This document shows positions 32,597-49,661 of a DNA stretch of 64,000 bases, one piece after another. The stretch lies in IMG/VR virus record IMGVR_UViG_3300044632_001003, positions 141,010 through 205,009 of that record; one strand, 5' to 3'. Positions within the stretch are counted from its first letter, which is position 1. Every line of letters begins with the position of its first letter. Both the position numbers and the translations under genes were made by a program. The notes under the pieces are model-generated. The model did not search any database, was not told the DNA's origin, and worked only from the letters and a program-made list of their open reading frames with translations.

Positions 32597-32660
32597 GTTA
32601 CATTCGTTAAGAATTGTTACACAATTATATAGCAAAAATAAAGGGGCGTCAAGCCCCCTT
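32597..32660 (-). promoter_or_regulatory. Terminator of the glycan operon fused to the hli promoter, with HLR1-like repeats
   Basis: Hairpin AAGGGGGC-TTGAC-GCCCCTT; TTGACG-17-TATAAT; GTTACATT/GTTAAGAA/GTTACACA repeats at 32597-32623. Confidence 0.7.
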
Positions 32661-32697: not shown

Positions 32698-33489
32698 CTA
32701 TTTGCCTTCCCAACCAGGTGGAAGAGTTCCATAGTAAGGATTCAATTCGAAAAATTGATTCCAATCATCAATCTTATTGGATTCGTTTTTCCAAAAATCC
32801 CACAGACCATCATAACTTGATTTATGAAATACATCTACATGTTCTGTATGGATTGTTGATCCAAGTTCAATCTTATAAAGAAATAAAGGGATTGCATAAG
32901 TATTGCCAGAGTTATAAATCAAGTCATCTGCAACTGCCCTTGGCTTAACTCCATTATCCAGTTTATATTTGTCACCTCTAACATGCAGTTCAATTAACTT
33001 TTGTGCGTGACGACGAGTAATCAAATAACATGCCGTAGAAAAATCATTTACAAAACGACGATGAATTGGAATATTAATTTGTGCTGGATTAATAATCGCA
33101 AGTTGAACCACATCATAAGCATACGGAATTTTGGAAAAGAAATCTTTCCAAGTAAATGGCCAATATGAAACTGTGGAAATATCACAATCATCCTCCATGA
33201 TTAAAGCACATGGAGCATCAGAGGTCTCAACAAAATGCTTAAGAACTTTCAGGTGAGAAGTTACACATCCAACCTCTCCCGAATTCATCATGTCAGGATA
33301 TCGACCTTTTAGAATTGAACCTAGATCATCTTCTCTACCATCATAAGCAGAGATTCTCTCAAAGTTTTCAATTTCCCAGTACTTAAACTGACCTTCCATA
33401 TATTGTGCCCTTTCTGGTTGCCCATCAAGATTGATATAATAGATGGGAGGAAGACCTTTAAGTTTATACGCTGCTTTATTCTTGTCCAT
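32698..33489 (-). CDS. Glycosyltransferase family 25
   Basis: YYINLD...R, RISAYDG, GEVGCVTSH, LIMEDD. Confidence 0.85.
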   Translation of the reverse strand: MDKNKAAYKLKGLPPIYYINLDGQPERAQYMEGQFKYWEIENFERISAYDGREDDLGSILKGRYPDMMNSGEVGCVTSHLKVLKHFVETSDAPCALIMEDDCDISTVSYWPFTWKDFFSKIPYAYDVVQLAIINPAQINIPIHRRFVNDFSTACYLITRRHAQKLIELHVRGDKYKLDNGVKPRAVADDLIYNSGNTYAIPLFLYKIELGSTIHTEHVDVFHKSSYDGLWDFWKNESNKIDDWNQFFELNPYYGTLPPGWEGK

Positions 33490-34195
33490 GGTTCAATATG
33501 TTGTTTAAAATTTCGACCTTTTGATTGAATACATTTACCTTACCATCCCATAAAGTTCCACCTCTAAAGTGAAGAAACTTCCCATTCATAAAAGTTTCCA
33601 TATTAATAAGAGTTTGACCACGATAATCACCCTCAAATACACAGTCTATAGATTCTGGGGTAATATTATTTTCGTTTAAAAAGTTATAAGATTCTCCACC
33701 AGTATCACACAGTTGCCCACCAAACGATCCTGGAAAAAATCTTGGTCTCCCAGACATCTCTTTTAATTTAGGCATATTTAAAAGAGTAAATCCTGGCCAA
33801 AGATAATTAACATCTTCTCGACTTTGCATATATGAAGATATAACTTTATCTTCCATATAATTGACCATATCAAACTTTTCCATCAAAAAGCAATCACTAT
33901 CCACAAGGAAAACAACATCATCCATACAAGACCTATAGATGATATTATCAAGTGCATATTGAATTGCATTTGCGTGAGATGCCGAAGGTCCAGCAACATC
34001 TGAATTCATATTCTTGATGTATGTTGCATCATACATCTCACAAATTCTCATGAACTCATTGCTAATATCTGGATCCTTTGAATCATCTATTGCAAAAAGA
34101 CGATAATCACACGTCAGATTTTCTTGGAACTGAATGCATTGCAATTCCAAGAACTGAGGAAAATTAACAACTGGAGAAAAAATACTTAGTTTCAT
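33476..34195 (-). CDS. Putative GT-A fold glycosyltransferase
   Basis: IDDS, DSD (DxD) motif, DTGG, HFRGG. Confidence 0.55.
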   Translation of the reverse strand: MKLSIFSPVVNFPQFLELQCIQFQENLTCDYRLFAIDDSKDPDISNEFMRICEMYDATYIKNMNSDVAGPSASHANAIQYALDNIIYRSCMDDVVFLVDSDCFLMEKFDMVNYMEDKVISSYMQSREDVNYLWPGFTLLNMPKLKEMSGRPRFFPGSFGGQLCDTGGESYNFLNENNITPESIDCVFEGDYRGQTLINMETFMNGKFLHFRGGTLWDGKVNVFNQKVEILNNILNHGQE

Positions 34196-34911
34196 TTCTT
34201 CTGGAGAACTACCTGATATTCGTCCATTACCAATTCAAATCCATTATCAATCAGATAAGGAATTGAATATTTTGCCTTACCATAATCAGATTCATCTTCA
34301 GCAATAATCTTAGGAGTTGTATTCCTAACATCATCAATCAGAATAATTCCTTTGTCGCTGATTAAATCCCTTTCAACGATAATCTTAGATTCTCTCAAAT
34401 GAAGTTCTGCAGTTGGTTCAATGGGAGTCATATCCCCAGTGTCCATGTACAGAAAATCAATCTTACCTTCACCGAGTTCTAGAAACTCCTCAGAGGACAT
34501 AACAACATGCTCAATGTTATCAAGACCTTCAGTTACAACTTTACTTCTACGAATATGACGTGGTTCCAAATCAACAGTGATGAAATCAATATCTGTTCCC
34601 TGAATTAATTCACCAACAACACGGGTGAAGCAACCCGCTGCCCAGTCCCACACATCAGGATTTTCTGGTTGCCAAAACTTAATATCATCACTATTGCATC
34701 CAGGAAACTTACCATCAACAAAACTGCGAGTTGTTCCAAGTTCAACAATTGTAGTAAAACCATTCTCTACAACTTGGTCCCAGCAATACTTCATTGTATC
34801 GTAACGGAACTTAGGAACTCTTCCGTAATACTTTTTAAATTCTTCATCAGTAGTATATTTTGCGTGAGCATTATCCATATACTCTTTATACTTTTCTAAT
34901 GCATTAGACAT
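34192..34911 (-). CDS. Putative SAM-dependent methyltransferase
   Basis: IVELGT, IDFLYMD, ILIDD. Confidence 0.7.
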   Translation of the reverse strand: MSNALEKYKEYMDNAHAKYTTDEEFKKYYGRVPKFRYDTMKYCWDQVVENGFTTIVELGTTRSFVDGKFPGCNSDDIKFWQPENPDVWDWAAGCFTRVVGELIQGTDIDFITVDLEPRHIRRSKVVTEGLDNIEHVVMSSEEFLELGEGKIDFLYMDTGDMTPIEPTAELHLRESKIIVERDLISDKGIILIDDVRNTTPKIIAEDESDYGKAKYSIPYLIDNGFELVMDEYQVVLQKK

Positions 34912-35926
34912 TATAGATTTTCCTCCATTGTTGTAGGGTTTTTTCCTTATGGGTTTTACTGCATTCTAACATTATAGCACAAATCTCTTCTCTGTGTGAA
35001 ACAACAGTTCGAAATGCTTCTGGTATTTCAGAGAAGTCATCAATATAAACTGCAAACTTATCAAAGTATTCATTATACCATTCACATGTCTGAACAGTAT
35101 TCTGATAGAGACCGCTACCAAACCAATAATTTGGTTGTCTCGAAAGTTTAAATATCAAATCCTCAGATGGAAGAATGACAGGCAATCCAATGCCCATCAT
35201 TTCAAATGCTGCAAGTTTAGAATACTGCTCTGGTAAAATAAAATATGCTTGATATTTCTTTGCAAGTTCAACAAGTCCAGAGTACCCCCTGTACTTACAA
35301 ACATCTGCAACTAAATTATAGGAATCAAATAATTTTATACTATCTTGAAAAATTGTGTCATTATGATAGCGAGATATAAGCACATCTCCACCTTTCAATT
35401 CATCTCCGTAATCCCCACCAAATCCGATTAATTTCAAATCATCTTCATCAGAAAGCGAAGTATCAATTGAATAACCAATAGGTCTCACAACTTCTTCAGT
35501 GATATTCACTCCAAAGTGCTTTGCCCACACTCTTTCAAATTCAGTATATGGAATCACTTTTACATTATCCATTGTTGTTGCTTGAGCGAACAAGGTATGA
35601 TAATCACTATCACCTTGCATATCATAATTAAATCGATTACAGACCCAGATAATCAATTGGCCAGTAAATTCTTGAATATTCTCAAGAAAAATTCGTGAAA
35701 GTGGAGCAGTGTCTGAGGTAATTACAAAATCAAAAGAATTAAAGTATTCTTTGTTCTTTTGCCAAACAGAGTTTGCATAATCTTTACTAATCACATAATG
35801 ATCTCTCTCAAGGATTTGGTTCCAAATTGAAAGTTTATTGGTTAAATCCAAACCCAATTCATTACAAACATATTGATGGTCCTTCAGGCAACCATAATGG
35901 TGTGATAGATGTAGAACTTTTTTCAT
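34904..35926 (-). CDS. Putative GT-B-like glycosyltransferase or hypothetical protein
   Basis: FE.MG.GLPVILP resembles the GT-B signature; operon context. Confidence 0.5.
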   Translation of the reverse strand: MKKVLHLSHHYGCLKDHQYVCNELGLDLTNKLSIWNQILERDHYVISKDYANSVWQKNKEYFNSFDFVITSDTAPLSRIFLENIQEFTGQLIIWVCNRFNYDMQGDSDYHTLFAQATTMDNVKVIPYTEFERVWAKHFGVNITEEVVRPIGYSIDTSLSDEDDLKLIGFGGDYGDELKGGDVLISRYHNDTIFQDSIKLFDSYNLVADVCKYRGYSGLVELAKKYQAYFILPEQYSKLAAFEMMGIGLPVILPSEDLIFKLSRQPNYWFGSGLYQNTVQTCEWYNEYFDKFAVYIDDFSEIPEAFRTVVSHREEICAIMLECSKTHKEKTLQQWRKIYNV

Positions 35927-36822
35927 TGCTCAGAAATCCAATCCTCAAGTTTTATACTCGATTGCCACCCATAAACTCTCTTTATCTTAGATACATTTGC
36001 CAAACTCTGCCTTGCTTCCGCAGGTCTTGGTGGAATGTGTGTAATATCACTGGAAATCATCTCAGCAATTTTTTTAATCGTTGTAGCCTTACCAGTTCCA
36101 ACATTATAGACTTGTCCATAAGTCTCAACATCCTTTTCAGCAACAGTAAGGTTTGCTGAGGCAATATCAGATACATGAATAAAGTCTCTAGTTTGTCTGC
36201 CATCACCAACAACAGTCAAGGTTTTTCCATCCTTTCTCTGATCTAGAAAAATTCCCATCACAGGAGCGTATTGACCCGTCTTTGGTTGGCGTGGTCCATA
36301 GACATTAAAGTATCTAAGAGTTACTGTCTTCACATTATATAAGTCAGCATACATCTTCATCAAATATTCACCAGACAACTTAGAAACTGAATAAGGATTC
36401 AAAGGGTCTGGGGTATCAGTCTCTAAGCAAATTTTATCAGTCAGACCGTAGATTGCTGCTGTAGATGAAAATACAACTTTATCAACCTTAGCAACTCTTG
36501 CTGCTTCCAAAACGTGACAAAGACTTGATACATTATTGAGATATGCTTTGTCTGGATTCTCAATACAATAAGGAATGGAAACATCAGATGCTAGATGAAA
36601 AATGTAATCACATCCCCTACACATTTCTGTTAGAGTTCCAAGATTATCAGGAGAACTTAAATCAAACTGATAGTTTCTAGCACCAGGATTCCAATAATAC
36701 TCATCATGACTATTGGCAGATTCATTGTCTATGACCATTACGTCGTAGTCATTTGCCAATAGTAAATCTACCAGATTAGATCCAATAAATCCTGCACCAC
36801 CTGTAACTAATGCTTTTTTCAT
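35923..36822 (-). CDS. NAD-dependent epimerase/dehydratase (WcaG/GalE-like)
   Basis: VTGGAGFIGS, YSVSK, RYFNVYGP, RDFIHV. Confidence 0.92.
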   Translation of the reverse strand: MKKALVTGGAGFIGSNLVDLLLANDYDVMVIDNESANSHDEYYWNPGARNYQFDLSSPDNLGTLTEMCRGCDYIFHLASDVSIPYCIENPDKAYLNNVSSLCHVLEAARVAKVDKVVFSSTAAIYGLTDKICLETDTPDPLNPYSVSKLSGEYLMKMYADLYNVKTVTLRYFNVYGPRQPKTGQYAPVMGIFLDQRKDGKTLTVVGDGRQTRDFIHVSDIASANLTVAEKDVETYGQVYNVGTGKATTIKKIAEMISSDITHIPPRPAEARQSLANVSKIKRVYGWQSSIKLEDWISEQ

Positions 36823-37755
36823 AAGATTGCAAACATGTCCTTTAATCTACTTACATAGGTATGCCCATCTCTAATGAAGGACATCGCACTTCTCATTTTC
36901 TCTTCAGTGCAGTTTCTAGAATCTTCAACCAGTTTCTGATATAGATTTTCTAGATTGGAATCGGTTAAAGTGTTCTCCAAAAACATCGGCAATTTCTGGA
37001 TGATTTGAACCCGTCCATCTACCATAACTAATGTTCTTAAATAATCTACAAGGATAATATCTACCCTGCACCAAATGGGGAGCATCTCGTATATCAACTG
37101 AAATATAAGAGTCTCTTACCATCTGAATGTTTTGATTGATGTCTGGAGCACTGTTAGAGTAAATACCAGACCATCCACCAGGATTCCTAAAATACTTTCC
37201 GTGCCTTTCACAGATATTTTTAAACTCTAGGATATTCTGCCCGTTTGGAGTTCCGATAAAATAAATGCTATCTCTCGACTCATCAAACAATTCAGGTTCA
37301 ACTTGATCGATTTCATCGGGCAGTAAATCAGTTGCCCACATCGTTGTAATTGTCTTCGTCTTTGGATGAAAATAATGGTGCAAACTTATCTTCTGCAACT
37401 CATCATCACTTGACCAAGTAATATTATCTGCAGGATTCCAACGATCTGCAAAATAAACAAAGTTAAAATACCTTGGATGCGTTAAGCGATATGGAGTATC
37501 TCTATCAGAAAGCCCAAAAGGCAAATCTGCATTGTGATTAAAATACACACAGTCATCTAAAACTGGCATATTCTTACAAACATTATGCTCAGTAATAAAA
37601 ATAGATTCAGAAAAATCTACATTACTCACATCGTCATCATCATCAAACCATTCAACTTCATATCCAAGATAATCTGCTGCCCGCCAATATCCGAAATGTA
37701 CATAAGAGTGAGTATGAGTTCCAATCTTATGTCCCCATATTACTACCTTTTTCAT
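36819..37755 (-). pseudogene. Glycosyltransferase-like gene split by a frameshift near 36966
   Basis: The 276-aa ORF ends abruptly; another frame carries a plausible C-terminus (...IRDGHTYVSRLKDM) whose stop overlaps the next ATG. Confidence 0.6.
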
Positions 37756-38396
37756 TCTTTAACCCTCAATGGTAACCAAAAACGTTGGTCGGGAGACATA
37801 AACTCTACTGAAGGATAATCTGTCAATTTACCATCCGTTCCGTTAGAACTGGTTTGATAGAACATAGGTTCATCAAAAGCATATACATCATAATACTTTT
37901 GAACATCAGCAAATCCAATATCATGATGATCGGAAATCAAATACCCATGATAGGCAATTCGCTTGCACAAATCAACGTAGTCAGGATTGATATAGAGAAT
38001 TGCATGGGCACTAACCATATTATAAATGCGAACTAAATCATCATACCCCTCTACTTTGTCCCACTGAACACAAGGTCCAGAGTGAGAGTTCATTCTTCCC
38101 CATGAAGAAATTCCTAGATAAACAGCATCTGCCTCATCAGGAATCTCAATCTCATCTACAAAGTTAAGAGGAATGCAATCATCCTCTAAAACAATAAAGG
38201 GAGAATCTACTTCCTCCAATGCCAAAGCATGGGAATAAGCACATCCCCTTTTACCTATTGGGTCTTTGAATGCAGAAACCCTAATAACATTTTTGAATCC
38301 TAGTTTTTCTAGATTCTCTTCCATCAACTCCCGCCTACGGGATTGTTCATCTAAGTTAATATAAACAACTGGTAGTTCTGTCAGTTTTAACTTCAT
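37752..38396 (-). CDS. Glycosyltransferase family 25-like
   Basis: VYINLD...RR, GCAYSH, IVLEDD, SAHAILY. Confidence 0.8.
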   Translation of the reverse strand: MKLKLTELPVVYINLDEQSRRRELMEENLEKLGFKNVIRVSAFKDPIGKRGCAYSHALALEEVDSPFIVLEDDCIPLNFVDEIEIPDEADAVYLGISSWGRMNSHSGPCVQWDKVEGYDDLVRIYNMVSAHAILYINPDYVDLCKRIAYHGYLISDHHDIGFADVQKYYDVYAFDEPMFYQTSSNGTDGKLTDYPSVEFMSPDQRFWLPLRVKE

Positions 38397-39253
38397 ACTT
38401 CACCTCTAAGGGCTCTCAATATACCTTCTTCTAAAGAAATTTTAGGAGTGTAAAAACTTAGCATTTTTGATGGATCACAAACCCGATATTGAACTCCAAC
38501 AGGAGCAGTTGGAATATGATTCGGAGTTGGACTATATCCTTTCAATGAAGTGACTAAAGAAAACAGTTCATTGAAAGAAGTAGCAATGCCCCAACCAAGA
38601 TTTACAGGACCTTGAATATCCTCTTTGATTGCAGTATCTACTGCTTCAATTATATCATGCATATGAATAAAATCCCTAACCTGATTTCCATCTCCCCATA
38701 TATCAAATGGGTCTGCAAGATTTCTAGCTCTATTAATATAAGATGGGAAAGGATAATCTAAATCTTGGTCGGTTCCATATCCACTAAAAGGTCTAAAGAC
38801 ATTAATCTTTATACCTTCTGCTTCTAAAAACTGCATCAAAAATTCACCCGTCAATTTAGACCAACCATAAGTCATATCAGGGTTATTGATATCTGATAAA
38901 TCAATATCAGTTTCCTTTAATTGATACTTCTGTGTCTGCAGTTTGGTTGGATAGGCAGCAGAAGATGAAAAGTAAATAATGCGTGTTGGTTTAGTTCGAA
39001 GTGCCCACTGACACATTTCGGAATCAATAGAAAGGTCAGTTGCTACTGATAAAGGATTATGTTCGATTGTCTGACGACCACCAACGATTGCTGCTAGATG
39101 GACTACTAAATCAAACTTATCCTCTGAAGTCTTGAAGTAATCTCTACAATCATTGCCATCTTTAATATCGATACCAACAATATCATGATCAACATACTTC
39201 CTCATGAAGTATTTTCCGACAAATCCTTTATGTCCTGTGATTAATATTTTCAT
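38393..39253 (-). CDS. NAD-dependent epimerase/dehydratase
   Basis: ITGHKGFVG, YGWSK, RDFIH. Confidence 0.9.
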   Translation of the reverse strand: MKILITGHKGFVGKYFMRKYVDHDIVGIDIKDGNDCRDYFKTSEDKFDLVVHLAAIVGGRQTIEHNPLSVATDLSIDSEMCQWALRTKPTRIIYFSSSAAYPTKLQTQKYQLKETDIDLSDINNPDMTYGWSKLTGEFLMQFLEAEGIKINVFRPFSGYGTDQDLDYPFPSYINRARNLADPFDIWGDGNQVRDFIHMHDIIEAVDTAIKEDIQGPVNLGWGIATSFNELFSLVTSLKGYSPTPNHIPTAPVGVQYRVCDPSKMLSFYTPKISLEEGILRALRGEV

Positions 39254-39945
39254 GCTCTGAGTTCAGAATGATTTTTCTTTAGGGCAATAATTTTAGGAGC
39301 AAAGGGATAATCTGGATTTCCCATTTGTTCTTCGGCAAAACAATACGAAGGTGTCAGACTCAAAGTGGGTGGATTATCAATCAGGTAACGATTCATCTGT
39401 GACTCATCATGCCACAAAGCAATCACACCATTCTCAAGGTCTTTAGTCACACGGTCTGCAAGAACCTCTGCCATCTCAAGAAATCTTTTAGTAGATCCAC
39501 CATTGAATCCACCAGCGTAATAGTCCTCTCCTTCCTCACCCACAGGGACGTATGCCAGCGACTGTGGGTTTCTATCGTAAGACCTCTGCTCCTTAGGATA
39601 GAAGGACTGGTAGGGGTGCTGAGTGGCAACCAGGTCGCTTAGAACCTCATCACCAACCTTATCTACCAGACCCATATCCACATCAAAGTAGAAGCAATAA
39701 TCAAACTGAGAGATAAACTCTTTTTCTTTTACAAAGTAGTTGTATCTCTTCAGAGTTGGCATTGGCCAAGGTTCGTGGTCAATCTGACAAACTCGCACAT
39801 TGTCAGATGCTTCAACTTCATGGTCTGTGAAAAGCAAACACTCAATCTCATGTCCATTGAGAAAGTTCTCTTCAATATTATCAAGAAGTCTTTCAACGAA
39901 CTGAATATACTTGTTTGTTGCAATGGTCAGGATACAGATTTTCAT
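39250..39945 (-). CDS. Glycosyltransferase family 6 (ABO/alpha-1,3-Gal(NAc)T-like)
   Basis: IATNKY, FTD, DVD, YYAGGFNGG, WHDES.MNRY and IIALKK motifs; start placed at MKICIL. Confidence 0.88.
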   Translation of the reverse strand: MKICILTIATNKYIQFVERLLDNIEENFLNGHEIECLLFTDHEVEASDNVRVCQIDHEPWPMPTLKRYNYFVKEKEFISQFDYCFYFDVDMGLVDKVGDEVLSDLVATQHPYQSFYPKEQRSYDRNPQSLAYVPVGEEGEDYYAGGFNGGSTKRFLEMAEVLADRVTKDLENGVIALWHDESQMNRYLIDNPPTLSLTPSYCFAEEQMGNPDYPFAPKIIALKKNHSELRA

Positions 39946-39946
39946 C

Positions 39947-40675
39947 TTACACCTCAATATAATTTACATTATCAAAAACAAAAAATCCCTTGTCTTTATG
40001 TTCTTGAACGGTTCCATGTAAAAAGCAATTGAGATTTACTTCGGAACCATACTTATATTTAATCGCTGCTGCCATGGAGTTTCCTCCAGAGTAGAGACAG
40101 AAATAATCCTTTGCACTATGAATGATATCAGCATACTGGAAAATACTCTCAATCTCAAGAGGATTATTTTCAAATTCAAATCCACCTGAAAGTGAAAGTG
40201 AATTTACATTTTTAAAAGTTACCAATAATGCATCATCAGGAATAGAAGATTCTACCAATGAAAATAATTTATCAGCATCATAAAATTCACCGACATCATT
40301 CTTCAATAAAGTATGTGCAGACAAATCAACAATCGTCTTATCTCTATATTCCTCTAAAAGATTTGGTTGATAATAGATTTCAGGATATCTACCGTCACCT
40401 GCAAATCCATGCCGAATTTCTGCAGCAGAAACAATGTTGTCTGTTGTTCCATTTTTAAGATCGGGAGCACATGAACCAATGTTTGCATGATTGGTTGCAA
40501 CACCTTTTACATAAGGATTGTCTCTCCAACAAAATTCATAAATCTCAGGGTTTCTATATGTATTGTCAGCACTGATATAAAAATTATATCCCTTTTCTGC
40601 ATACAATTTAGGTAGGGTAGTGAATTGAAGATTGTCACCTAATCCACCCCAAGGTTGTCCAAAAAATACGTTCAT
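39947..40675 (-). CDS. Hypothetical glycan-modifying protein (GT9/GT11-like N-terminus)
   Basis: GGLGDNL motif; operon context. Confidence 0.5.
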   Translation of the reverse strand: MNVFFGQPWGGLGDNLQFTTLPKLYAEKGYNFYISADNTYRNPEIYEFCWRDNPYVKGVATNHANIGSCAPDLKNGTTDNIVSAAEIRHGFAGDGRYPEIYYQPNLLEEYRDKTIVDLSAHTLLKNDVGEFYDADKLFSLVESSIPDDALLVTFKNVNSLSLSGGFEFENNPLEIESIFQYADIIHSAKDYFCLYSGGNSMAAAIKYKYGSEVNLNCFLHGTVQEHKDKGFFVFDNVNYIEV

Positions 40676-41364
40676 TTTCCTTTATTTACAAAGATAAAAT
40701 CTGTTCCGAAATGAACTCCAGTATTTCCATAAGCCCTATAGAAATTGTGAGTTTTCAAAAAATTATTTACATCATCAAAAAGACACTGCCCATCATACAT
40801 TGGATTAATCTCCAACTCTGTATGAATCACCTGAACAGTTGAAAGAAGTTTTTCGCCCATTGATTCTAATGCAATTAACTCAGCACCCTGAAGGTCCATC
40901 CACATCAAATCAATATTCTCAATTCCATTTTCTTCACAAAAAGAATCTAGTCTCACACAATCAACTTCCAATTCTTTTTGGACGTATTTTTCAATATGGT
41001 CATATGTGCCATTTGCTTTATAAAGACTAGATGCACCTCTATTTCCATCAAACCAAGGAGTAACAGTTTTCTCAGGGTCAATAGGATAAAAAGTGCATAT
41101 TCCATTGTAACTATTCACAGCTTTATTAATGACTGTAATGTTATCAATGTCTTTGGTATTCTCTAAACAAACTTGATAAGAATCTGGGTTTGCTTCAAAT
41201 GCAAATATCCTTGCATTCTTATATCGTTTGGAGAATTCAATAGACTCCAAACAATGCAAAGAACCAACATCAAAAATTACAGAAACCTCATTTGGATCTC
41301 TGAATTTTTGGTTGGCAAAAGTATAAAATGTATCTAAAGATGAGACTTGGTACTGGGTTGTCAT
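40672..41364 (-). CDS. FkbM-family methyltransferase
   Basis: IFDVGS, AFEANP, RLD, MDLQGAEL. Confidence 0.88.
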   Translation of the reverse strand: MTTQYQVSSLDTFYTFANQKFRDPNEVSVIFDVGSLHCLESIEFSKRYKNARIFAFEANPDSYQVCLENTKDIDNITVINKAVNSYNGICTFYPIDPEKTVTPWFDGNRGASSLYKANGTYDHIEKYVQKELEVDCVRLDSFCEENGIENIDLMWMDLQGAELIALESMGEKLLSTVQVIHTELEINPMYDGQCLFDDVNNFLKTHNFYRAYGNTGVHFGTDFIFVNKGK

Positions 41365-41690
41365 TTAAAAAAGTCTTTGTCCGAAATTGCTTTATCATCA
41401 ATATAATAATCACCGAAGGGTTTCCCTAACATAAGATTAGTAAATTTACAACCCCAGGAAACTAACTGATCATATGTTTCATTATAACATGCATCATATG
41501 CTATTCTAACAGAGTTTTTACCTCTGCCCATACCTCTTGCAGTGAAGTATATAATAGTATGCCCATCATCATACAATGAATTAACTTTAGCAATCCTATC
41601 ATAGAAAGGTTCTGCTAAAGAATAATCACCATATGTTTGAGTGCATATGGTGTTATCAATATCTACAATATATGTTTTCAGTTCAGCCAT
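41361..41690 (-). CDS. HAD-superfamily phosphatase (capsule biosynthesis phosphatase type)
   Basis: DIDNTIC, FTARG, GKP..DYYIDDKA. Confidence 0.8.
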   Translation of the reverse strand: MAELKTYIVDIDNTICTQTYGDYSLAEPFYDRIAKVNSLYDDGHTIIYFTARGMGRGKNSVRIAYDACYNETYDQLVSWGCKFTNLMLGKPFGDYYIDDKAISDKDFFK

Positions 41691-42349
41691 GCAGAGAAGT
41701 CCTTATCAAAGCGTTCGATTGCTTCAGTGCTCTTAGGATGCTCAACCATCTCAAGAATAACGGGAAGACCAGTCGTTACGATATCGGCACCTTCTTTCCA
41801 AGCATCAGAAACATCAGTTTGAGTACGGATACTGCCAGCGATAATCTCACAATCTAGGGCGTTCTCATAAATGTAATTCTTGGTTCGGTCAAGAACCTTT
41901 GCAACATCTCCACCATGCTGCTTCAGGCGGCAGTAAAAGAGAGAAACGTAATGAGCACCAGCAGAAGCACACAGTTGCAGTTGCTGCTCACTGTAGCAAG
42001 CAGTGGCATTGATTTGCACACCTGCCTTGGAAACAGTTTTGATTGCACGAAGACCATCAAATCCAACTGGAATTTTCACATGAAACTTATTGCAAAGAGG
42101 ATAAAACCTTTCATACATTTCACTTGCTTGACGAACCATGCCCTCATAATCTAGGGCAAACACTTCAGCACTCAGAGAAAGATCTTCACTACCACAATAC
42201 TCAGCAAGTTTTTGAATTAGTGCATCAAAACTTCCCTTTGGTTCTTTAGCAATAATGGAAGGGTTGGTTGTTACACCTTGAATGGCACCCATTTCATTTG
42301 CTTTAATAATTTCATCAAGATTAGCTGTATCAGCAAAAAGATAGTTCAT
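41678..42349 (-). CDS. Transaldolase family protein (divergent TalC type)
   Basis: FADTA, GVTTNPS, SAEV, VKIP (Schiff-base Lys), INAT, GSIR. Confidence 0.88.
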   Translation of the reverse strand: MNYLFADTANLDEIIKANEMGAIQGVTTNPSIIAKEPKGSFDALIQKLAEYCGSEDLSLSAEVFALDYEGMVRQASEMYERFYPLCNKFHVKIPVGFDGLRAIKTVSKAGVQINATACYSEQQLQLCASAGAHYVSLFYCRLKQHGGDVAKVLDRTKNYIYENALDCEIIAGSIRTQTDVSDAWKEGADIVTTGLPVILEMVEHPKSTEAIERFDKDFSAWLN

Positions 42350-42783
42350 TCGTCCTCTTTAAATACGTAGGTTTTTCCATCTTCAACGATGTTTGAATCT
42401 TCATCATCGTCTTTATTTGACCATTCTACCACAATAGTATCCTCCAATGCAATACGCATATGCATCAAACCAGGAGGAATATGAAATACATCTCCTGCTT
42501 CTAAAATGATAGATTTATTTTTGGCACGACCAATTCTCATACCAACTTTAAGTTTTCCAGATTGAATATAATAATATTCATCTTTAGTGACGTGATACTC
42601 CATACTACTTTGAGTACCCGCTTTCATAAAGACTTCTTTTAAGGTAAAGTCATCAGTAGCAAATACGGTAGTGATGTATCCCCAATACTTCTCTCTTTTT
42701 TCTTCACACTTAAGTACAAGAGGAAGTTCTTGCCTCCCGTAACTATTGTCCGTAGTATTTGTTGATTCCATTCTTTCGTTCAA
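42346..42783 (-). CDS. Cupin-fold sugar isomerase/epimerase
   Basis: KYWG, SMEYH..KDE, FHIPPG.MH. Confidence 0.75.
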   Translation of the reverse strand: MNERMESTNTTDNSYGRQELPLVLKCEEKREKYWGYITTVFATDDFTLKEVFMKAGTQSSMEYHVTKDEYYYIQSGKLKVGMRIGRAKNKSIILEAGDVFHIPPGLMHMRIALEDTIVVEWSNKDDDEDSNIVEDGKTYVFKEDE

Positions 42784-43438
42784 AATGTTTTTTATACAAG
42801 TCTCTACTCAATCTACATGGTTGAATATGTGGATTGATTGAGGTGGTGTAGTAAGCCATTTCAGCAATTTCCTCTAACACTATAGCACATTCTAGTGTTC
42901 TTTTAGATGAATCTGAGAATACCATAACACCATGCCCAGGCAAAAGGATGGCAGGTATGTTAAGTGGATTTATTTTCTTAGATTGATAAAAATCAACTAC
43001 GCACTGTCCCAGATTCTTTTCATATTCATCAAGTTCAAACTTTTCTAGTTGTCTAGCAACTGGAATATCAGATAGAAAGTAATCGGCGTGAGTTGTCCCT
43101 AAAATAGGAATTGGTTTAAGTGCCTGTGCCCATGAAGTTGCAAACTTTGAATGACTATGAATAACTGATTTAATCTCTGGAAATGCCTTATAAATTTCCA
43201 AATGAATTGCTGTATCGACAGAGGGTTTCATACCAGAAATTAATTTTCCAGTATAAAGTTCGACAATACAAAGTTGGCTAAACGTAAGTTTATCAAACTC
43301 AATCCCAGAAGGTTTAATAACAATATGCTTACCATCTTCAGTAAGCACACTGGCATTTCCCCAAGTTAGTTTGACTAAACTGTTTTCCTTTAAACTTTTG
43401 TTCAGAGATAAACAATCTTCAATTGCCTTATTCATGTA
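42743..43438 (-). CDS. L-ribulose-5-phosphate 4-epimerase (AraD)-like class II aldolase
   Basis: LTWGNAS, IKPSG, PSVDT..H, HSHS.FATSWAQ, GTTHADYF; start placed at MNKAIE. Confidence 0.88.
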   Translation of the reverse strand, partial: YMNKAIEDCLSLNKSLKENSLVKLTWGNASVLTEDGKHIVIKPSGIEFDKLTFSQLCIVELYTGKLISGMKPSVDTAIHLEIYKAFPEIKSVIHSHSKFATSWAQALKPIPILGTTHADYFLSDIPVARQLEKFELDEYEKNLGQCVVDFYQSKKINPLNIPAILLPGHGVMVFSDSSKRTLECAIVLEEIAEMAYYTTSINPHIQPCRLSRDLYKKHFERKNGINKYYGQ

Positions 43439-44204
43439 ATGGTTTAGATACAAATTCAGCGGCGACTTGGTTAGCAAAAACTGGGTCACCAGTTGCTAGA
43501 AGAGCTGCATAAAAACAATCTCCTGCACCAATAGTATTTACCACATTTTCCACAGGCGTTGCTGGATAATTAACACCGTTCATCATGCAACCATCTGCAC
43601 CTTTTGTTACACAGATATTTGTTACCCGATCTACGTGTTTTGCTTCCTCTTGATTACAGACTAAGTAATCAACCGCCCAATACCTATCATAGTTTGATGT
43701 CTTACTCGATACCTGAGAAGAGGCATATGTAATTTTTCCAGAATCAGTTGCATGTTTGATGAATGATTCTGTAATAAATCCACAACGGTAATCAGCAAAA
43801 GCAATGATATCAAACTCATCAATATCAAAATTTTCTAAGAACGATTTTGAAAACTCATTATTGACATCATTAACTTGTAGATGATTGTATCGACTATCTC
43901 CATGATTAACCCAGTATCTTGTTTTAGTATTATTACGACCCTGGAAAAAACTTTTTACTGGGAGATCATAATGCAACTCAAAAGTATCACAGTCTTTATC
44001 AGACATTGATGTTGCAAATGTTACGTCTCTACCAAATCCACGAAGAAACTTGGCAACATTAGCAGCGCCACCAAAATCATAACTGTGCTCTTCAATTACC
44101 GTTTTGATTGTTGGAGACTCTAGTGATAGTCCGATTGCCCTAAGTTCTAGAGTTTCATCAATGATGGTATCACCAACAATTAGATACTTTAAATTTTCTC
44201 GCAT
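43428..44204 (-). CDS. PfkB-family sugar kinase (HldE/RfaE domain I-like)
   Basis: VGD.IIDE, GGAANVA, KTRY, NTIGAGD. Confidence 0.85.
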   Translation of the reverse strand: MRENLKYLIVGDTIIDETLELRAIGLSLESPTIKTVIEEHSYDFGGAANVAKFLRGFGRDVTFATSMSDKDCDTFELHYDLPVKSFFQGRNNTKTRYWVNHGDSRYNHLQVNDVNNEFSKSFLENFDIDEFDIIAFADYRCGFITESFIKHATDSGKITYASSQVSSKTSNYDRYWAVDYLVCNQEEAKHVDRVTNICVTKGADGCMMNGVNYPATPVENVVNTIGAGDCFYAALLATGDPVFANQVAAEFVSKPLHE

Positions 44205-45049
44205 GTTTCAAGTTCTCTAATTTTTTGCATGGTATTGGTTGTGGAATAGTCTCCAACCAAAGGATAAACTTTAACTTGTATAGACTCTGGAATACAGTCT
44301 CTGCTTCTTACTTCATCAGCAGTCCATTCAGAACCCTTAACAATTACATCTGGAGAGAGTGTTTGATAGAATTCTTGAAGTTCTTCAGTTGAATCAAAAA
44401 TGATGACTTCATCAACATAACGATTTGTCTCAAGAACCCTTCTACGATCTTCTTCATTATTAACAGGTCGATTGTCACCTTTGAGTTGTTTTACTCTGCG
44501 GTCAGAATCAATAGCAACAATCAGTTTTGTTCCCTGCAATCTAGCAAACTTCAAAAGTTCAATATGGCCCTTATGAAGGATATCAAAAACTCCATTTGTT
44601 AAAACAATGCCAGTATGTGAATCAATCTTTTCAACACGCTTGACATGACGACCTTCTCCCCATGCTTCATCTAACCACATTTTGCTCATCTCTCTCATTT
44701 CAATCTGAGAAGACAACCACGTACCCAAACAAAGAACATTGGAATCATTATGCTCTCTAGACTTAACCGCAGTGAGTTCATTATGAGCTAGAACAGCACG
44801 GACACCAGCAAAACGATTTGCAACGATACTCATACCAACACCAGTTCCACAGATAAGGATACCTCGGTCCGCCTCACGATTACTCACAATTGTAGATAAC
44901 TGAGCTGCATAATCAACATAATCGACACTCACATCAGAAGTATAAGGTCCAATATCAATAACCCGATATCCTTCTCCCTTAAGATACATCTTTAGTTGTT
45001 CTTTGTTCTCGACCCCATTATGGTCAGAAGAAATAATGATCGTTTTCAT
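44189..45049 (-). CDS. Fusion of RpiB/LacAB sugar-phosphate isomerase and RfaE domain II-like nucleotidyltransferase
   Basis: SDHNG, ICGTGVG, REHNDSNVLCLG, then TNGVFDILHKGH, KGDNRP, YSTT. Confidence 0.88.
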   Translation of the reverse strand: MKTIIISSDHNGVENKEQLKMYLKGEGYRVIDIGPYTSDVSVDYVDYAAQLSTIVSNREADRGILICGTGVGMSIVANRFAGVRAVLAHNELTAVKSREHNDSNVLCLGTWLSSQIEMREMSKMWLDEAWGEGRHVKRVEKIDSHTGIVLTNGVFDILHKGHIELLKFARLQGTKLIVAIDSDRRVKQLKGDNRPVNNEEDRRRVLETNRYVDEVIIFDSTEELQEFYQTLSPDVIVKGSEWTADEVRSRDCIPESIQVKVYPLVGDYSTTNTMQKIRELETCEKI

Positions 45050-45846
45050 AGAAATTCAAAGTTACCAAATGGATAATCAACTGTTGATTTATTATAGCAT
45101 TCTCCACCAAACCAATTTTTGGGGGCAATTACTTTTTTACTTTTTGCTAACCATGCACCCCACCAAGAGAATGATGAATTTGCAATGATGTGATAATCGC
45201 ATAATGACATTAAGCAAAGATCAGCATCGGTTGTGTTTTCTTCTGATATCAAAAACCTATCATCTTTAAATAAATCCTGCTCTTTACACCAAGATTCATC
45301 ATCAGAAAAAACAATAACAGGAAGTTCTGGTAGTTTAGAAAGTGCTTCCTGATAATAACTAATTGGTTGCACAGGATGATTTGGATTAGAGGTATAATCT
45401 CCTCTACGAATATGTAAAGAGATTACTTCACTATCAAAATTTTCTTTAAGAAATTCTTTACAATTAGAATACAACTCTTCATTAAATCTAAAGTCTTCTC
45501 GTATCTCATCTTCAATATGCTTGAAGTATTTTTCGGTTTGAAAGTATCCCATTAAATCTACATTATCTGGGCAATTGATGAATAATTCCTCATCAAATTC
45601 ATGCTTTCTTTCCCAAAAAGTATTGGCATCCTGTAGAGCACAATCATTATTTTTTTCTATATTTTCAAAAACATCGTATAAAATAACATCAGAATTTTTG
45701 ACATTATCATCATGCTGCCCAAAAACATATCTAGGTGGAATGATAAATCCATATCCCCTATTTCTAGCAATTCCTTTTAAAGAAGCATATTGAAACATTT
45801 GATTGGCAAGTCTTCCAAGATTGCCAATATGATTGAGTGATATCAT
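45046..45846 (-). CDS. Glycosyltransferase family 11 (alpha-1,2-fucosyltransferase-like)
   Basis: GRLANQMFQY, GYFQ, HIRRGDY, IANSSFSWWGAWL. Confidence 0.92.
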   Translation of the reverse strand: MISLNHIGNLGRLANQMFQYASLKGIARNRGYGFIIPPRYVFGQHDDNVKNSDVILYDVFENIEKNNDCALQDANTFWERKHEFDEELFINCPDNVDLMGYFQTEKYFKHIEDEIREDFRFNEELYSNCKEFLKENFDSEVISLHIRRGDYTSNPNHPVQPISYYQEALSKLPELPVIVFSDDESWCKEQDLFKDDRFLISEENTTDADLCLMSLCDYHIIANSSFSWWGAWLAKSKKVIAPKNWFGGECYNKSTVDYPFGNFEFL

Positions 45847-46430: not shown

Positions 46431-46454
46431 AAATATATCACAATATATCAAATT

Positions 46455-46490
46455 ATTATAATAAAAAAGGGAGTTGTTGTCAACTCCCTT
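46455..46490 (-). promoter_or_regulatory. Terminator hairpin overlapping a perfect sigma70 promoter for the glycan operon
   Basis: AAGGGAGTTG-ACAA-CAACTCCCTT plus T-run; TTGACA(46478-83)-17-TATAAT(46455-60). Confidence 0.85.
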
Positions 46491-46499
46491 GATTCTTTT

Positions 46500-47371: not shown

Positions 47372-47423
47372 ATTATAAGGTGTTGAGACTTTTCTGTCAA
47401 GTGTGCCAGTCTATGAACTGGTT
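47372..47423 (-). promoter_or_regulatory. Sigma70-like early promoter with upstream ACTGGCAC motif
   Basis: TTGACA(47395-400)-17-TATAAT(47372-77), preceded by CCAGTTCATAGACTGGCAC. Confidence 0.8.
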
Positions 47424-48904: not shown

Positions 48905-48986
48905 AATATCCCCCTTTTGTTCCGAAGTAAAGAGTTGTTAATACGAAAGGAATTGAAACAAATAAAAGTGCTTTTGCTAATAACAT
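48864..48986 (-). CDS. ndhP: NDH-1L subunit NdhP homologue (40 aa)
   Basis: MLLAKALLFVSIPFVLTTLYFGTKGGYYDTEKYKGNGTAH matches the NdhP pattern FGTxxGxYDTxxYxGNGxAH; absent from the ORF track. Confidence 0.85.
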   Translation of the reverse strand: MLLAKALLFVSIPFVLTTLYFGTKGGYYDTEKYKGNGTAH

Positions 48987-49650: not shown

Positions 49651-49661
49651 TGATAATCTCC

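What the first reader, a model, noticed from the sequence alone, without database searches (positions are those of the whole stretch)
41361..45049. Phage-encoded, self-contained pathway for an unusual high-carbon (heptose/octose-type) NDP-sugar
Seen in sequence: six overlapping genes inside a glycosyltransferase operon. They encode an RpiB isomerase fused to an RfaE-II nucleotidyltransferase, an HldE-I-like PfkB kinase, an AraD-like epimerase, a cupin, a transaldolase and a HAD phosphatase. Established: ADP-heptose synthesis uses isomerase (GmhA), kinase, HAD phosphatase (GmhB) and nucleotidyltransferase, and lincosamide octose synthesis adds a dedicated transaldolase (LmbR) in front. Here no GmhA-like gene is visible and an RpiB domain or cupin could take its place. 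The transaldolase is divergent (YVSLFYCR rather than YVSPFVGR) but keeps the Glu/Phe transaldolase signature. Inference: this is not the usual talC gene that boosts the pentose phosphate pathway. It is more likely a module that builds a non-standard C7/C8 sugar from epimerised pentose phosphates to glycosylate virions or the host surface.
Basis: partly seen in the sequence, partly recalled or inferred. Interest (0 to 1): 0.82.

Follow-up and report, generated by a model that had tools for sequence, protein, structure and literature searches.

The report
Mobile cassette for an unusual activated sugar
A freshwater cyanophage carries a six-gene cassette, also found in marine phages, SAR11-like bacteria and tiny archaea, that very probably makes a nucleotide-activated, non-standard sugar for a surface glycan; which sugar it makes is still unknown.

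Summary
The six genes are at the stated coordinates and have the stated domains. They sit in a roughly 14-kb glycan operon of a freshwater T4-like cyanophage. The block RpiB-nucleotidyltransferase / PfkB kinase / AraD-type 4-epimerase / cupin / transaldolase is collinear in 18 viral contigs, another T4-like phage, alphaproteobacterial O-antigen-like loci and DPANN archaeal MAGs, and it is under purifying selection. The transaldolase forms its own clade (100/100), apart from canonical cyanophage TalC, with catalytic and phosphate-binding residues intact and clade-specific changes beside the active site. Metagenomes hold a bicupin-transaldolase fusion. The kinase is closest to heptose-7-P kinase HldA and the nucleotidyltransferase to a putative cytidylyltransferase (5x9q). 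The small HAD belongs to the family that a 2026 paper assigns to phage arabinose-1,5-bisphosphate phosphatases. GT9 (heptosyltransferase-family) genes flank the cassette in cellular loci. So an NDP-sugar (probably ADP-sugar) pathway is well supported, and it is not a pentose-phosphate-boosting talC. The claim of a C7/C8 sugar is plausible but unproven. An L-pentose product, or ordinary heptose made with a cupin in place of GmhA, is not excluded. "Self-contained" is overstated, because there is no Rpe or transketolase. I found no description of this cassette in the searched literature.

The parts
44189..45049 (-). Fusion protein of 286 aa. The N-terminal part is ribose-5-phosphate isomerase B (residues 4-144, about 44618-45040). 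The C-terminal part is an HldC/RfaE-II-like nucleotidyltransferase (residues 148-279, about 44213-44608).
   Evidence: RpiB passes the NCBIfam equivalog cut-off and has the CGTG and GRHxxR motifs. The NT has the HxGH motif (HKGH) and the STT motif. Its best PDB match is 5x9q (76 bits), ahead of TagD (54 bits). The fusion is conserved in all cassette loci.
43428..44204 (-). PfkB-family sugar kinase of 258 aa, closest to the anomeric heptose-7-phosphate kinases HldA / HldE-I.
   Evidence: rfaE_dom_I, 52 bits. A profile of 8 orthologues matches HldA (4e84) over its full length with E = 1e-10; the next best is ribokinase, over the C-terminus only. The GAGD motif is invariant.
42743..43489 (-). AraD-type L-ribulose-5-phosphate 4-epimerase (class II aldolase fold). 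The likely start is the ATG at 43435, giving 230 aa.
   Evidence: The match to E. coli AraD (1JDI) is 169 bits. N28, K42, S44, G45, S74, D76, H95, H97, T116, D120, H171, H218 and Y229 are all conserved; only S75 is changed, to V.
42346..42783 (-). Metal-binding single-domain cupin of 141-145 aa, a putative sugar(-phosphate) isomerase or epimerase. It is the most conserved gene of the cassette.
   Evidence: W34, K49, H64, E69, H108, E120 and D129 are invariant. There are weak matches to PMI C-terminal and D-lyxose isomerase families. The AF2 model has pLDDT 92. Foldseek gives CapF cupin, KdgF, D-lyxose isomerase and PMI, all at E about 1e-7, so it does not discriminate.
41678..42349 (-). Transaldolase of the small TalC/FSA-type subfamily (223 aa), belonging to a distinct cassette-linked clade.
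   Evidence: D7, E62, K92 (Schiff-base lysine), N114, T116, S136, F138, R141, S173 and R175 are invariant. Clade-specific residues are C118, L137 and Y139. The clade has 100/100 support and is separate from canonical cyanophage TalC.
41361..41690 (-). Small cap-less HAD phosphatase of 109 aa (motifs DxDxT, T/S, K, DD) of the 1XPJ / TIGR01689 family.
   Evidence: PDB matches are 9iqw (52 bits) and 1xpj (26 bits). It is 33-40% identical to the small HAD of T4-like Straboviridae that sits next to NDP-sugar pyrophosphorylase genes. PMC13326640 assigns that family to Araf-1,5-P2 5-phosphatase.
45046..45846 (-). GT11-family glycosyltransferase directly upstream, overlapping by 4 nt.
40672..41364 (-). 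FkbM-type methyltransferase directly downstream, overlapping by 4 nt. FkbM-type genes recur near the cassette in other loci.
32698..40675 (-). The rest of the glycan island. It holds a conserved unknown ORF (39947-40675), GT6 (39250-39957), an SDR epimerase (38393-39253), a GT25-like gene (37752-38396), an unknown ORF (36925-37755), an SDR (35923-36822), a probable GT-B transferase (34904-35926), a methyltransferase (34192-34911), an unknown ORF (33476-34195) and GT25 (32698-33489).
46455..46483 (-). Perfect sigma-70 consensus (TTGACA-17-TATAAT) at the head of the island, embedded in a hairpin at 46467-46490.
   Evidence: This is a pattern match only.
32640..32660 (-). GC-rich hairpin plus T-run just after the last gene of the island; the likely operon terminator.
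   Evidence: This is a pattern match only.

Best explanation
The six genes are one horizontally mobile cassette that turns pentose-phosphate-pathway intermediates into a nucleotide-activated (most likely ADP-beta-linked) non-standard aldose. The surrounding glycosyltransferases then add this sugar to a glycan on the infected cell or the virion.

Back end (well supported): an aldose omega-phosphate is phosphorylated at the anomeric carbon by the HldA-like PfkB kinase. The small HAD removes the terminal phosphate. The NT domain couples the sugar-1-phosphate to a nucleotide.

Front end (inferred): RpiB interconverts Ru5P and R5P. The AraD-type enzyme interconverts D-xylulose-5-P and L-ribulose-5-P. 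The dedicated transaldolase transfers a dihydroxyacetone unit from F6P or S7P to a phosphorylated aldose acceptor, giving a C7 or C8 ketose phosphate. The PMI/lyxose-isomerase-like cupin, which is always adjacent to the transaldolase and in some metagenomes fused to it, converts that ketose phosphate to the aldose.

The product would then be a heptose- or octose-type sugar, in the manner of the lincosamide octose front end joined to an ADP-heptose-type back end. The exact sugar and the order of the front-end steps are not determined.
For: The gene content and intact catalytic motifs are shown.

The genes overlap by 4-29 nt and sit in an operon bounded by a consensus promoter and a terminator.

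The five-gene block is strictly collinear in 18 IMG/VR loci with differing flanks. It is also collinear in a second T4-like phage (L116), in O-antigen-like loci with Wzy, DegT or PglB (L024, L117), and in Woesearchaeota- and Pacearchaeota-labelled MAGs (L025, L118). GC content of these contexts ranges from 0.27 to 0.49.

dN/dS is 0.03-0.39 for all six genes.

The transaldolase clade is separate from TalC with 100/100 support and a stem length of 1.35, and has clade-specific invariant residues beside the active site. Fusions of bicupin with Tal and of cupin with HAD exist, and the order AraD-bicupin-Tal-HAD recurs.

The kinase profile's best PDB hit is HldA. The NT's best PDB hit is 5x9q, and it matches rfaE_dom_II.

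GT9 genes of three mutually divergent lineages lie beside the cassette.

The cupin's neighbours carry PMI and Lyx_isomer matches.

Short contigs from a metatranscriptome cover the HAD, the Tal/cupin junction and AraD of a close relative. This is weak evidence.
Against: No product has been observed. The AraD active site is that of a pentulose-5-P epimerase, yet no route with canonical stereochemistry places L-Ru5P, RpiB, the transaldolase and a single cupin in one linear path, so at least one enzyme must have a new specificity. The HAD's relatives are assigned to pentofuranose bisphosphate phosphatases (PMC13326640). The fold and profile searches for the cupin do not separate an isomerase from an NDP-ketosugar epimerase such as CapF. 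No GT9 is found in the phage loci. The kinase and NT score far below the NCBIfam heptose equivalog cut-offs. Some of the 'cellular' MAG contigs could be mis-binned viruses: L021 has a phage-like exonuclease.
Confidence: 0.45

Rival explanations
1. The product is an activated L-pentose (or another pentose). Host Xu5P is converted to L-Ru5P by the AraD-type enzyme. The cupin, like PMI or L-ribose isomerase, makes L-ribose-5-P (or L-arabinose-5-P). The kinase, HAD and NT then run the same 5-P to 1,5-P2 to 1-P to NDP-sugar sequence that phages use for UDP-arabinofuranose. RpiB and the transaldolase only channel hexose and pentose phosphates towards Xu5P.
For: The AraD site is fully conserved for a pentulose-5-P. 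AraD and the cupin are always adjacent. The HAD belongs to the family assigned to Araf-1,5-P2 5-phosphatase. There is a phage precedent for this logic on a pentose (PMC13326640). RpiB and AraD score close to their canonical families, so no new specificity is needed for them.
Against: A mere feeder role does not explain a separate, long-branched transaldolase clade that is co-inherited with the cassette across phages, bacteria and archaea, nor the cupin-Tal fusion. The feeder route is incomplete without Rpe and transketolase. The kinase and NT are closest to heptose-type enzymes, and GT9 genes are neighbours.
Confidence: 0.25
2. [quoted passage not shown] The transaldolase supplies sedoheptulose-7-P. 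The cupin replaces GmhA (a PMI-like isomerisation to the manno configuration). The PfkB kinase, small HAD and NT replace HldA, GmhB and HldC. RpiB and AraD are accessory.
For: The kinase is closest to HldA, and the NT matches rfaE_dom_II with 5x9q as its best PDB hit. GT9 neighbours are present. The cupin + kinase + HAD + NT core exists without Tal, AraD or RpiB in S-T4, S-SM2 and S-CAM1. The cupin has PMI-like matches.
Against: An AraD-type epimerase has no role in this route, yet it is invariably present and under strong constraint. Cyanobacterial hosts already make S7P, so a dedicated and divergent transaldolase would be superfluous. All heptose equivalog cut-offs are missed by a wide margin.
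Confidence: 0.15
3. The transaldolase and RpiB are ordinary pentose-phosphate-boosting auxiliary metabolic genes that merely happen to lie next to sugar-nucleotide genes.
For: Cyanophages commonly carry talC, and the window also carries gnd. No second talC was found in the 64-kb window.
Against: The transaldolase lies outside the canonical TalC clade. RpiB is fused to the NT. The block is collinear in bacterial and archaeal glycan loci. A cupin-Tal fusion exists.
Confidence: 0.04
4. The activated sugar is used to hypermodify phage DNA, as arabinosyl-hydroxycytosine is in RB69-like phages, and not to build a glycan.
For: The HAD family is shared with those phages. The closest isolate, S-SRM01, has an AfhE-like NT-kinase plus SIS plus HAD at the same position.
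Against: The cassette lies in O-antigen-type loci with Wzy, GT9 and PglB in cells. In the phage it sits among GT6, GT11 and GT25 transferases and sugar methyltransferases. No base-hydroxylating ThyA-like gene was seen in the island, although I did not search for one specifically.
Confidence: 0.04

Closest known systems
ADP-heptose pathway of Gram-negative LPS (GmhA, HldE or HldA+HldC, GmhB; GT9 heptosyltransferases)
   Same: The logic is the same: ketose-P to aldose-P, anomeric phosphorylation by a PfkB kinase, removal of the terminal phosphate by a HAD enzyme, and a cytidylyltransferase-fold NT. The best PDB match of the kinase is HldA. The NT matches rfaE_dom_II and the HldE C-terminal region. 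GT9 genes flank the cassette in cellular loci.
   Different: There is no SIS-type GmhA. The HAD belongs to another subfamily. The NT is fused to RpiB, not to the kinase. An AraD-type epimerase, a dedicated transaldolase and a cupin are added. All equivalog cut-offs are missed.
Lincosamide octose pathway (LmbR transaldolase, LmbN isomerase, LmbP kinase, LmbK phosphatase, LmbO nucleotidyltransferase giving GDP-octose). This is from my own knowledge; papers PMC4351081 and PMC5854111 mention LmbR, transaldolase and octose.
   Same: A dedicated transaldolase sits in front of an isomerase / kinase / phosphatase / NT series, and ribose-5-P is the likely acceptor (an RpiB is present).
   Different: Homology to LmbR could not be tested. 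The isomerase here is a cupin, not a SIS enzyme. The back end is of the ADP-heptose type. The setting is a surface-glycan operon of phages, bacteria and archaea, not an antibiotic cluster. An AraD-type epimerase is added.
Phage UDP-arabinofuranose pathway for arabinosyl-5-hydroxycytosine (arabinose-5-P isomerase, AfhE, AfhF; RB69, DLP3, HY126), PMC13326640
   Same: The same four-step logic is encoded by a phage, and the small HAD is of the same family.
   Different: The kinase and NT belong to other families: PfkB and a cytidylyltransferase-fold NT here, against APH-like kinase and NTP_transferase in AfhE. The isomerase is not a SIS enzyme. The target here is probably a glycan, not DNA. The AfhE-like architecture occurs in S-SRM01, not in this window.
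Canonical cyanophage TalC (auxiliary metabolic gene, T4-GC 239)
   Same: It belongs to the same small transaldolase subfamily and has the same catalytic residues, including the Glu/Phe signature.
   Different: Identity is only 28-35%. It forms a separate clade. The motif is SLFYxR in place of SPFVGR, and NxTxC in place of NVTL(V/I/C)F. It is embedded in a glycan cassette.
Cyanomyovirus 'LPS' island core, T4-GC 304-308 (NT, carbohydrate kinase, 'phosphoheptose isomerase' = HAD, 'cysteine dioxygenase' = cupin, epimerase) in S-SM2, S-T4, S-CAM1 and S-SSM7
   Same: The NT (47%), HAD (52-57%) and cupin (39-43%) are homologous and sit in the same kind of glycosyltransferase island.
   Different: Those islands have no RpiB fusion, no AraD-type epimerase and no second transaldolase. 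S-SM2 instead has a different class II aldolase and a TPP-dependent E1/transketolase-like enzyme.

Membership tests
ADP-heptose biosynthesis (GmhA / HldE / GmhB) | SIS-type sedoheptulose-7-P isomerase GmhA | tested here: not met
   tblastn with E. coli GmhA finds nothing in the window or in any cassette locus.
ADP-heptose biosynthesis (GmhA / HldE / GmhB) | HldE-I / HldA heptose-7-P kinase at equivalog level | tested here: inconclusive
   TIGR02198 scores 52 bits against a cut-off of 345. A profile of orthologues has HldA (4e84) as its best and only full-length PDB match, with E = 1e-10.
ADP-heptose biosynthesis (GmhA / HldE / GmhB) | HldE-II / HldC heptose-1-P adenylyltransferase | tested here: inconclusive
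   TIGR02199 scores 127.8 bits against a cut-off of 181.5. The best PDB match is 5x9q at 76 bits. The HxGH and STT motifs are present.
ADP-heptose biosynthesis (GmhA / HldE / GmhB) | GmhB-type HAD phosphatase | tested here: not met
   There is no GmhB model hit. The HAD matches TIGR01689, 9iqw and 1xpj instead.
Canonical cyanophage TalC | Falls inside the cyanophage TalC clade | tested here: not met
   Separate clades with 100/100 and 100/99 support. Identity is 28-35%.
Transaldolase (as opposed to fructose-6-P aldolase) | Schiff-base Lys, Glu (not Gln) and Phe (not Tyr), and phosphate-binding Arg / Ser-x-Arg | tested here: met
   K92, E62, F138, R141 and S173/R175 align with T. maritima and B. 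subtilis transaldolases and are invariant in the clade.
L-ribulose-5-phosphate 4-epimerase (AraD / SgbE / UlaF) | Zn ligands H95/H97/H171, catalytic D120 and Y229, and phosphate pocket N28/K42/S44/G45/S74 | tested here: met
   All are conserved in the alignment to 1JDI; only S75 is changed, to V. The NCBIfam subfamily score of 236 bits is just below the cut-off of 257.
Ribose-5-phosphate isomerase B | Score above the equivalog cut-off, catalytic Cys/Thr (CGTG), and GRHxxR | tested here: met
   TIGR01120 scores 146.4 against a cut-off of 138.65, and NF004051 scores 158.1 against 135. The motifs are seen.
Lincosamide octose pathway (LmbR-type transaldolase) | Orthology of the transaldolase to LmbR / CcbR | not testable with these tools
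   No tool returned an LmbR sequence.
Phage UDP-arabinofuranose pathway (AfhE / AfhF) | AfhF-type small HAD | tested here: met
   33-40% identity to the small HAD of T4-like phages that sits next to NDP-sugar pyrophosphorylase genes. 1xpj is a shared structural relative. The link to AfhF itself is by annotation and by the paper, not by a direct alignment.
Phage UDP-arabinofuranose pathway (AfhE / AfhF) | Bifunctional NTP_transferase + APH-like kinase, and a SIS arabinose-5-P isomerase | tested here: not met
   Here the NT has the cytidylyltransferase fold and the kinase is PfkB. No SIS gene is present.

The most novel reading that the evidence does not exclude
The cassette makes a sugar that has not been described before: an ADP-activated octose, or a heptose/octose with an L-configured tail derived from L-ribulose-5-P. 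Its transaldolase clade would then be a new family of glycan-building transaldolases, a counterpart in primary metabolism of LmbR. This family would have spread by horizontal transfer among abundant aquatic cyanophages, SAR11-like Alphaproteobacteria and DPANN archaea, where it diversifies cell-surface glycans that phages recognise.
Probability: 0.35. Interest if true: 0.8.

Novelty: new variant of a known kind. Interest (0 to 1): 0.62.

Why it matters
Surface glycans decide which phages can attach to a cell. The gene islands that make them are the most variable parts of marine bacterial and cyanophage genomes, yet most of their chemistry is unknown.

This cassette is very common. The RpiB-NT fusion has 1774 relatives at E <= 1e-20, some of them on near-complete 190-226 kb phage contigs. 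Identical DNA occurs in at least 19 lake metagenome runs from 2016 to 2024. The cassette also crosses the boundaries between viruses, bacteria and archaea.

If its product is a new higher-carbon or L-configured sugar, three things would follow. A new branch would be added to nucleotide-sugar biochemistry. A large set of genes now mislabelled 'transaldolase', 'phosphoheptose isomerase' and 'cysteine dioxygenase' would get a function. Phage 'talC-like' genes in metagenomes could no longer all be counted as pentose-phosphate-boosting genes.

Tried and rejected
It returned mostly ordinary transaldolases and only one cassette locus (L025), so the bacterial distribution is under-sampled.
- Foldseek and profile searches for the cupin gave generic cupins and did not settle isomerase against epimerase.
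- Adjacency of Tal and GmhA in clostridial MAGs (L035, L036, L038) looked like a precedent for a heptose pathway. It turned out to be a catabolic Tal-ROK-SIS operon under an AraC-type regulator.
- Adjacency of Tal and AraD in Clostridia is in catabolic-looking arabinose loci, with ordinary enzymes.
- The unknown 340-aa ORF at 34904-35926 is not a GT9. It is probably another GT-B transferase.
- The island's SDRs are generic NDP-sugar epimerases and not clearly HldD.
- I could not determine whether the genome has a canonical talC elsewhere. There is none in the window. None is annotated in 100 kb of S-SRM01. The S-SRM01 paper never mentions talC.
- Four full-text searches that combined the cassette's parts (cyanophage, heptose, transaldolase, nucleotidyltransferase, 4-epimerase, cupin and similar terms) found no paper describing this gene combination.
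- Whether L021 ('Ca. Pelagibacter TMED166') is cellular or viral stays open.

Full report
OBSERVATION. The stretch 41361-45049 holds six ORFs on the minus strand, exactly as described. Pfam, NCBIfam and PHROG scans give the following.
- 44189-45049: a 286-aa fusion. Residues 4-144 are ribose-5-phosphate isomerase B, which passes the NCBIfam equivalog cut-off (146.4 against 138.65). Residues 148-279 are a cytidylyltransferase-fold nucleotidyltransferase closest to RfaE domain II (127.8 bits, below the cut-off of 181.5).
- 43428-44204: a PfkB kinase whose best named hit is RfaE domain I (52 bits, far below the cut-off).
- 42743-43489: an AraD-like class II aldolase-fold protein (236 bits against a cut-off of 257).
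- 42346-42783: a cupin.
- 41678-42349: a small TalC/FSA-type transaldolase.
- 41361-41690: a 109-aa HAD phosphatase.

Successive genes overlap by 4-29 nt. The AraD gene most likely starts at the ATG at 43435 and the cupin at the ATG at 42771. No GmhA homologue exists in the window.

SETTING. The window comes from a T4-like cyanomyovirus. Its nearest isolate is the freshwater Synechococcus phage S-SRM01, at about 81% nucleotide identity over a fifth of the flank. Identical DNA is present in at least 19 lake or freshwater metagenome runs dated 2016-2024. The six genes lie inside an island of about 14 kb that contains:
- GT11, GT6 and two GT25-type transferases, plus a probable GT-B transferase;
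- two SDR epimerases;
- FkbM-type and other methyltransferases;
- a 2OG-Fe(II) oxygenase.

The island is bounded by a 12/12 sigma-70 consensus at 46483-46455 and a strong hairpin-plus-T-run at 32660-32640 (pattern matches only). At the same genomic position S-SRM01 carries a different cassette with the same logic: a SIS isomerase, a bifunctional NTP_transferase-APH kinase and a small HAD. Cassettes of this kind therefore appear to be interchangeable within the island.

THE INDIVIDUAL ENZYMES.
- AraD-type epimerase. The alignment to E. coli AraD (1JDI, 169 bits) conserves the three Zn histidines, D76, the catalytic D120 and Y229, H218, and the phosphate pocket N28/K42/S44/G45/S74/T116. Only S75 is changed. 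From what is established about AraD, this is the site of a pentulose-5-phosphate 4-epimerase (D-xylulose-5-P to and from L-ribulose-5-P).
- RpiB domain. It has the Cys-type CGTG motif and GRHxxR.
- Transaldolase. It keeps D7, E62, the Schiff-base K92, N114, T116, S136, F138, R141 and S173-x-R175, that is, the Glu/Phe transaldolase signature and the phosphate site.
- Kinase. It keeps the GAGD motif, and a profile of eight orthologues finds heptose-7-phosphate kinase HldA (4e84) as its best and only full-length solved relative.
- NT domain. It has HxGH and STT motifs. Its best solved relative is 5x9q, which scores above TagD.
- HAD. It has all four HAD motifs. It matches PDB 9iqw ('capsule biosynthesis protein') and 1xpj. 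It is 33-40% identical to the small HAD that sits next to NDP-sugar pyrophosphorylase genes in T4-like phages of enterobacteria and Acinetobacter. A 2026 paper assigns that family (AfhF, RB69 gp51, DLP3 gp81) to arabinofuranose-1,5-bisphosphate 5-phosphatase (PMC13326640).
- Cupin. It is the most conserved gene of the cassette (86-94% identity among phage variants). W34, K49, H64, E69, H108, E120 and D129 are invariant. Its relatives carry weak PMI C-terminal and D-lyxose isomerase matches. A confident model (pLDDT 92) matches the CapF cupin, KdgF, D-lyxose isomerase and PMI about equally. The cupin is therefore a metal-dependent sugar isomerase or epimerase, but which of the two is not resolved.

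THE CASSETTE IS A UNIT.
- The order RpiB-NT / PfkB / AraD / cupin / Tal is identical in 18 IMG/VR loci at 52-100% protein identity. The flanking genes differ, and the HAD is either adjacent or a few kb away.
- The same block, followed by a 106-118-aa HAD, occurs in these places:
  - a second T4-like phage contig that carries gp45, gp44 and regA (L116);
  - loci with Wzy, DegT, PglF-like or STT3/PglB genes that look like bacterial O-antigen clusters (L024, L117);
  - a contig labelled Candidatus Pelagibacter (L021);
  - Woesearchaeota- and Pacearchaeota-labelled MAGs (L025, L118).
- GC content of these contexts runs from 0.27 to 0.49.
- Pairwise dN/dS is 0.03-0.39 for all six genes, although dS is saturated.
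- The RpiB-NT fusion has 1774 relatives at E <= 1e-20, some on contigs of 190-226 kb.
- No isolated phage in the GenBank collection has the AraD-type gene or the fusion.
- Metagenomes contain a bicupin-transaldolase fusion followed by a HAD and a GT2, a cupin-HAD fusion, and the order AraD-bicupin-Tal-HAD.

These facts argue that the transaldolase and the cupin act in successive steps of one dedicated pathway.

THE TRANSALDOLASE IS NOT talC. It is 28-35% identical to cyanophage TalC and scores higher against the Thermotoga maritima enzyme. I built a maximum-likelihood tree with 17 cassette-type sequences, five canonical phage TalCs, eleven bacterial or archaeal transaldolases and the two E. 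coli FSAs. In it the cassette clade has 100/100 support (stem length 1.35) and the TalC clade 100/99. The link between the two is unsupported (30/58) and was flagged as a possible long-branch artefact. Clade-specific invariant residues lie next to the active site: SLFYxR in place of SPFVGR, and NxTxC in place of NVTL(V/I/C)F. The window holds no second talC. S-T4 has both a canonical talC and a kinase/NT/HAD/cupin island with no second transaldolase.

HOW IT MOST LIKELY WORKS.

Back end (supported by homology and context). An aldose omega-phosphate is phosphorylated at C1 by the HldA-like kinase. The HAD removes the terminal phosphate. The NT activates the sugar-1-phosphate. By my knowledge of the LPS pathway, the PfkB-kinase plus cytidylyltransferase-fold-NT pair is the hallmark of the beta/ADP route. 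That fits with GT9 (heptosyltransferase-family) genes of three mutually very divergent lineages lying directly beside the cassette in L021/L022/L118, L117 and L025.

Front end (inferred). RpiB and the AraD-type enzyme remodel pentose phosphates. The transaldolase adds a C3 unit to a phosphorylated aldose. The cupin converts the resulting 3S,4R ketose phosphate into an aldose.

With canonical stereochemistry, three constraints apply (my reasoning from established enzyme specificities):
- RpiB handles only 3R ketoses;
- transaldolase products are 3S,4R;
- PMI/lyxose-isomerase-type cupins make 2S,3S (manno-type) aldoses.

The simplest complete route is therefore Ru5P to R5P to octulose-8-P to a manno-type octose-8-P to ADP-octose. 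That route leaves the AraD-type enzyme without a role. Routes that use L-Ru5P need a new specificity in either the cupin or the transaldolase. This gap is the main weakness of the explanation, and it is why I give the higher-carbon-sugar version only about 0.45. I would put the general statement, that the cassette makes an NDP-sugar for a glycan, at about 0.8.

RIVALS.
- An activated L-pentose made by AraD, cupin, kinase, HAD and NT, with RpiB and the transaldolase as feeders (0.25). For: the intact pentulose-5-P site and the HAD family. Against: the dedicated transaldolase clade and the cupin-Tal fusion.
- Ordinary ADP-heptose with the cupin in place of GmhA (0.15). This does not explain AraD.
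- Plain pentose-phosphate-boosting auxiliary genes (0.04), or a sugar donor for DNA modification (0.04). Both are poorly supported.

EXPRESSION. One aquatic metatranscriptome holds short contigs, 92-98% alike, over the HAD, the Tal/cupin junction, AraD and GT11. These come from a related strain, and DNA carry-over cannot be excluded, so this is only a weak sign of transcription.

KNOWN OR NEW. The four-step activation logic is known from ADP/GDP-heptose, from the lincosamide GDP-octose pathway and from phage UDP-arabinofuranose. The NT/kinase/HAD/cupin core is annotated, partly wrongly, in S-SM2, S-T4 and S-CAM1. The following appear to be new: the RpiB-NT fusion, the AraD-type epimerase and the dedicated transaldolase clade in one conserved cassette; its spread across viruses, bacteria and archaea; and its association with GT9. 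Four full-text searches for combinations of these parts found no description. I rate it a new variant of a known kind.

NOT DONE. There is no LmbR phylogeny, because no sequence could be obtained. I did not check for a canonical talC outside the window. The cellular or viral status of some MAG contigs is unresolved. No product is known.

Noticed in passing
L119 23178-27501 (S-SRM01, NC_070963.1 193177-197500): At the position syntenic with the window's island, the closest isolate carries GDP-mannose 4,6-dehydratase, an SDR, a 191-aa SIS isomerase, a 508-aa NTP_transferase+APH kinase (AfhE-like architecture) and a 113-aa HAD. This is a different sugar-activation cassette with the same logic.
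   Followed up: partly
window 39250-39957 and 45046-45846: The phage island encodes both a GT6 and a GT11 enzyme. These are the two families that build histo-blood-group-type epitopes. It also encodes two GDP-sugar-type SDRs.
   Followed up: no
window 54710-56212: A porin-like gene of 500 aa, 73% identical to the S-SRM01 'porin', lies in the most GC-rich stretch of the window (GC 0.477). It has no PHROG match.
   Followed up: partly
L112 138-1589 (protein P0193); also P0190 and P0230: Metagenomic fusion proteins involve this cupin family: bicupin+transaldolase, cupin+HAD_2, and RmlD-like SDR+cupin, the last resembling CapF in architecture.
   Followed up: partly
window 45843-46514, 47422-48072, 56423-57037, 57550-58119: Several 2OG-Fe(II) oxygenase-like genes flank the island. 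The first lies inside the putative operon, directly downstream of the consensus promoter.
   Followed up: no
window 48986-50696 and 53620-54597: Auxiliary metabolic genes lie next to the island: plastoquinol terminal oxidase, 6-phosphogluconate dehydrogenase (a source of Ru5P) and a phosphate-binding pstS-like gene.
   Followed up: no
window 46467-46490: A 10-bp-stem hairpin overlaps a perfect TTGACA-17-TATAAT promoter on the minus strand. A second 12/12 promoter match is at 47400-47372.
   Followed up: no
L033, L073, L080, L086, L095; L036 6957-10228: In Clostridia an ordinary transaldolase lies next to an ordinary AraD, in what look like arabinose catabolic loci. One MAG has a Tal-ROK kinase-SIS isomerase operon beside an AraC-type regulator.
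   Followed up: partly
L002 3719-4927 and 11045-11719 (S-SM2): The S-SM2 glycan island combines the same NT/HAD/cupin core with a TPP-dependent E1/transketolase-like enzyme, a non-AraD class II aldolase and a Zn alcohol dehydrogenase. This may be another unusual sugar skeleton.
   Followed up: no
window 7517-14638: A very large ORF of 2373 aa lies upstream in the structural region. I did not examine it.
   Followed up: no
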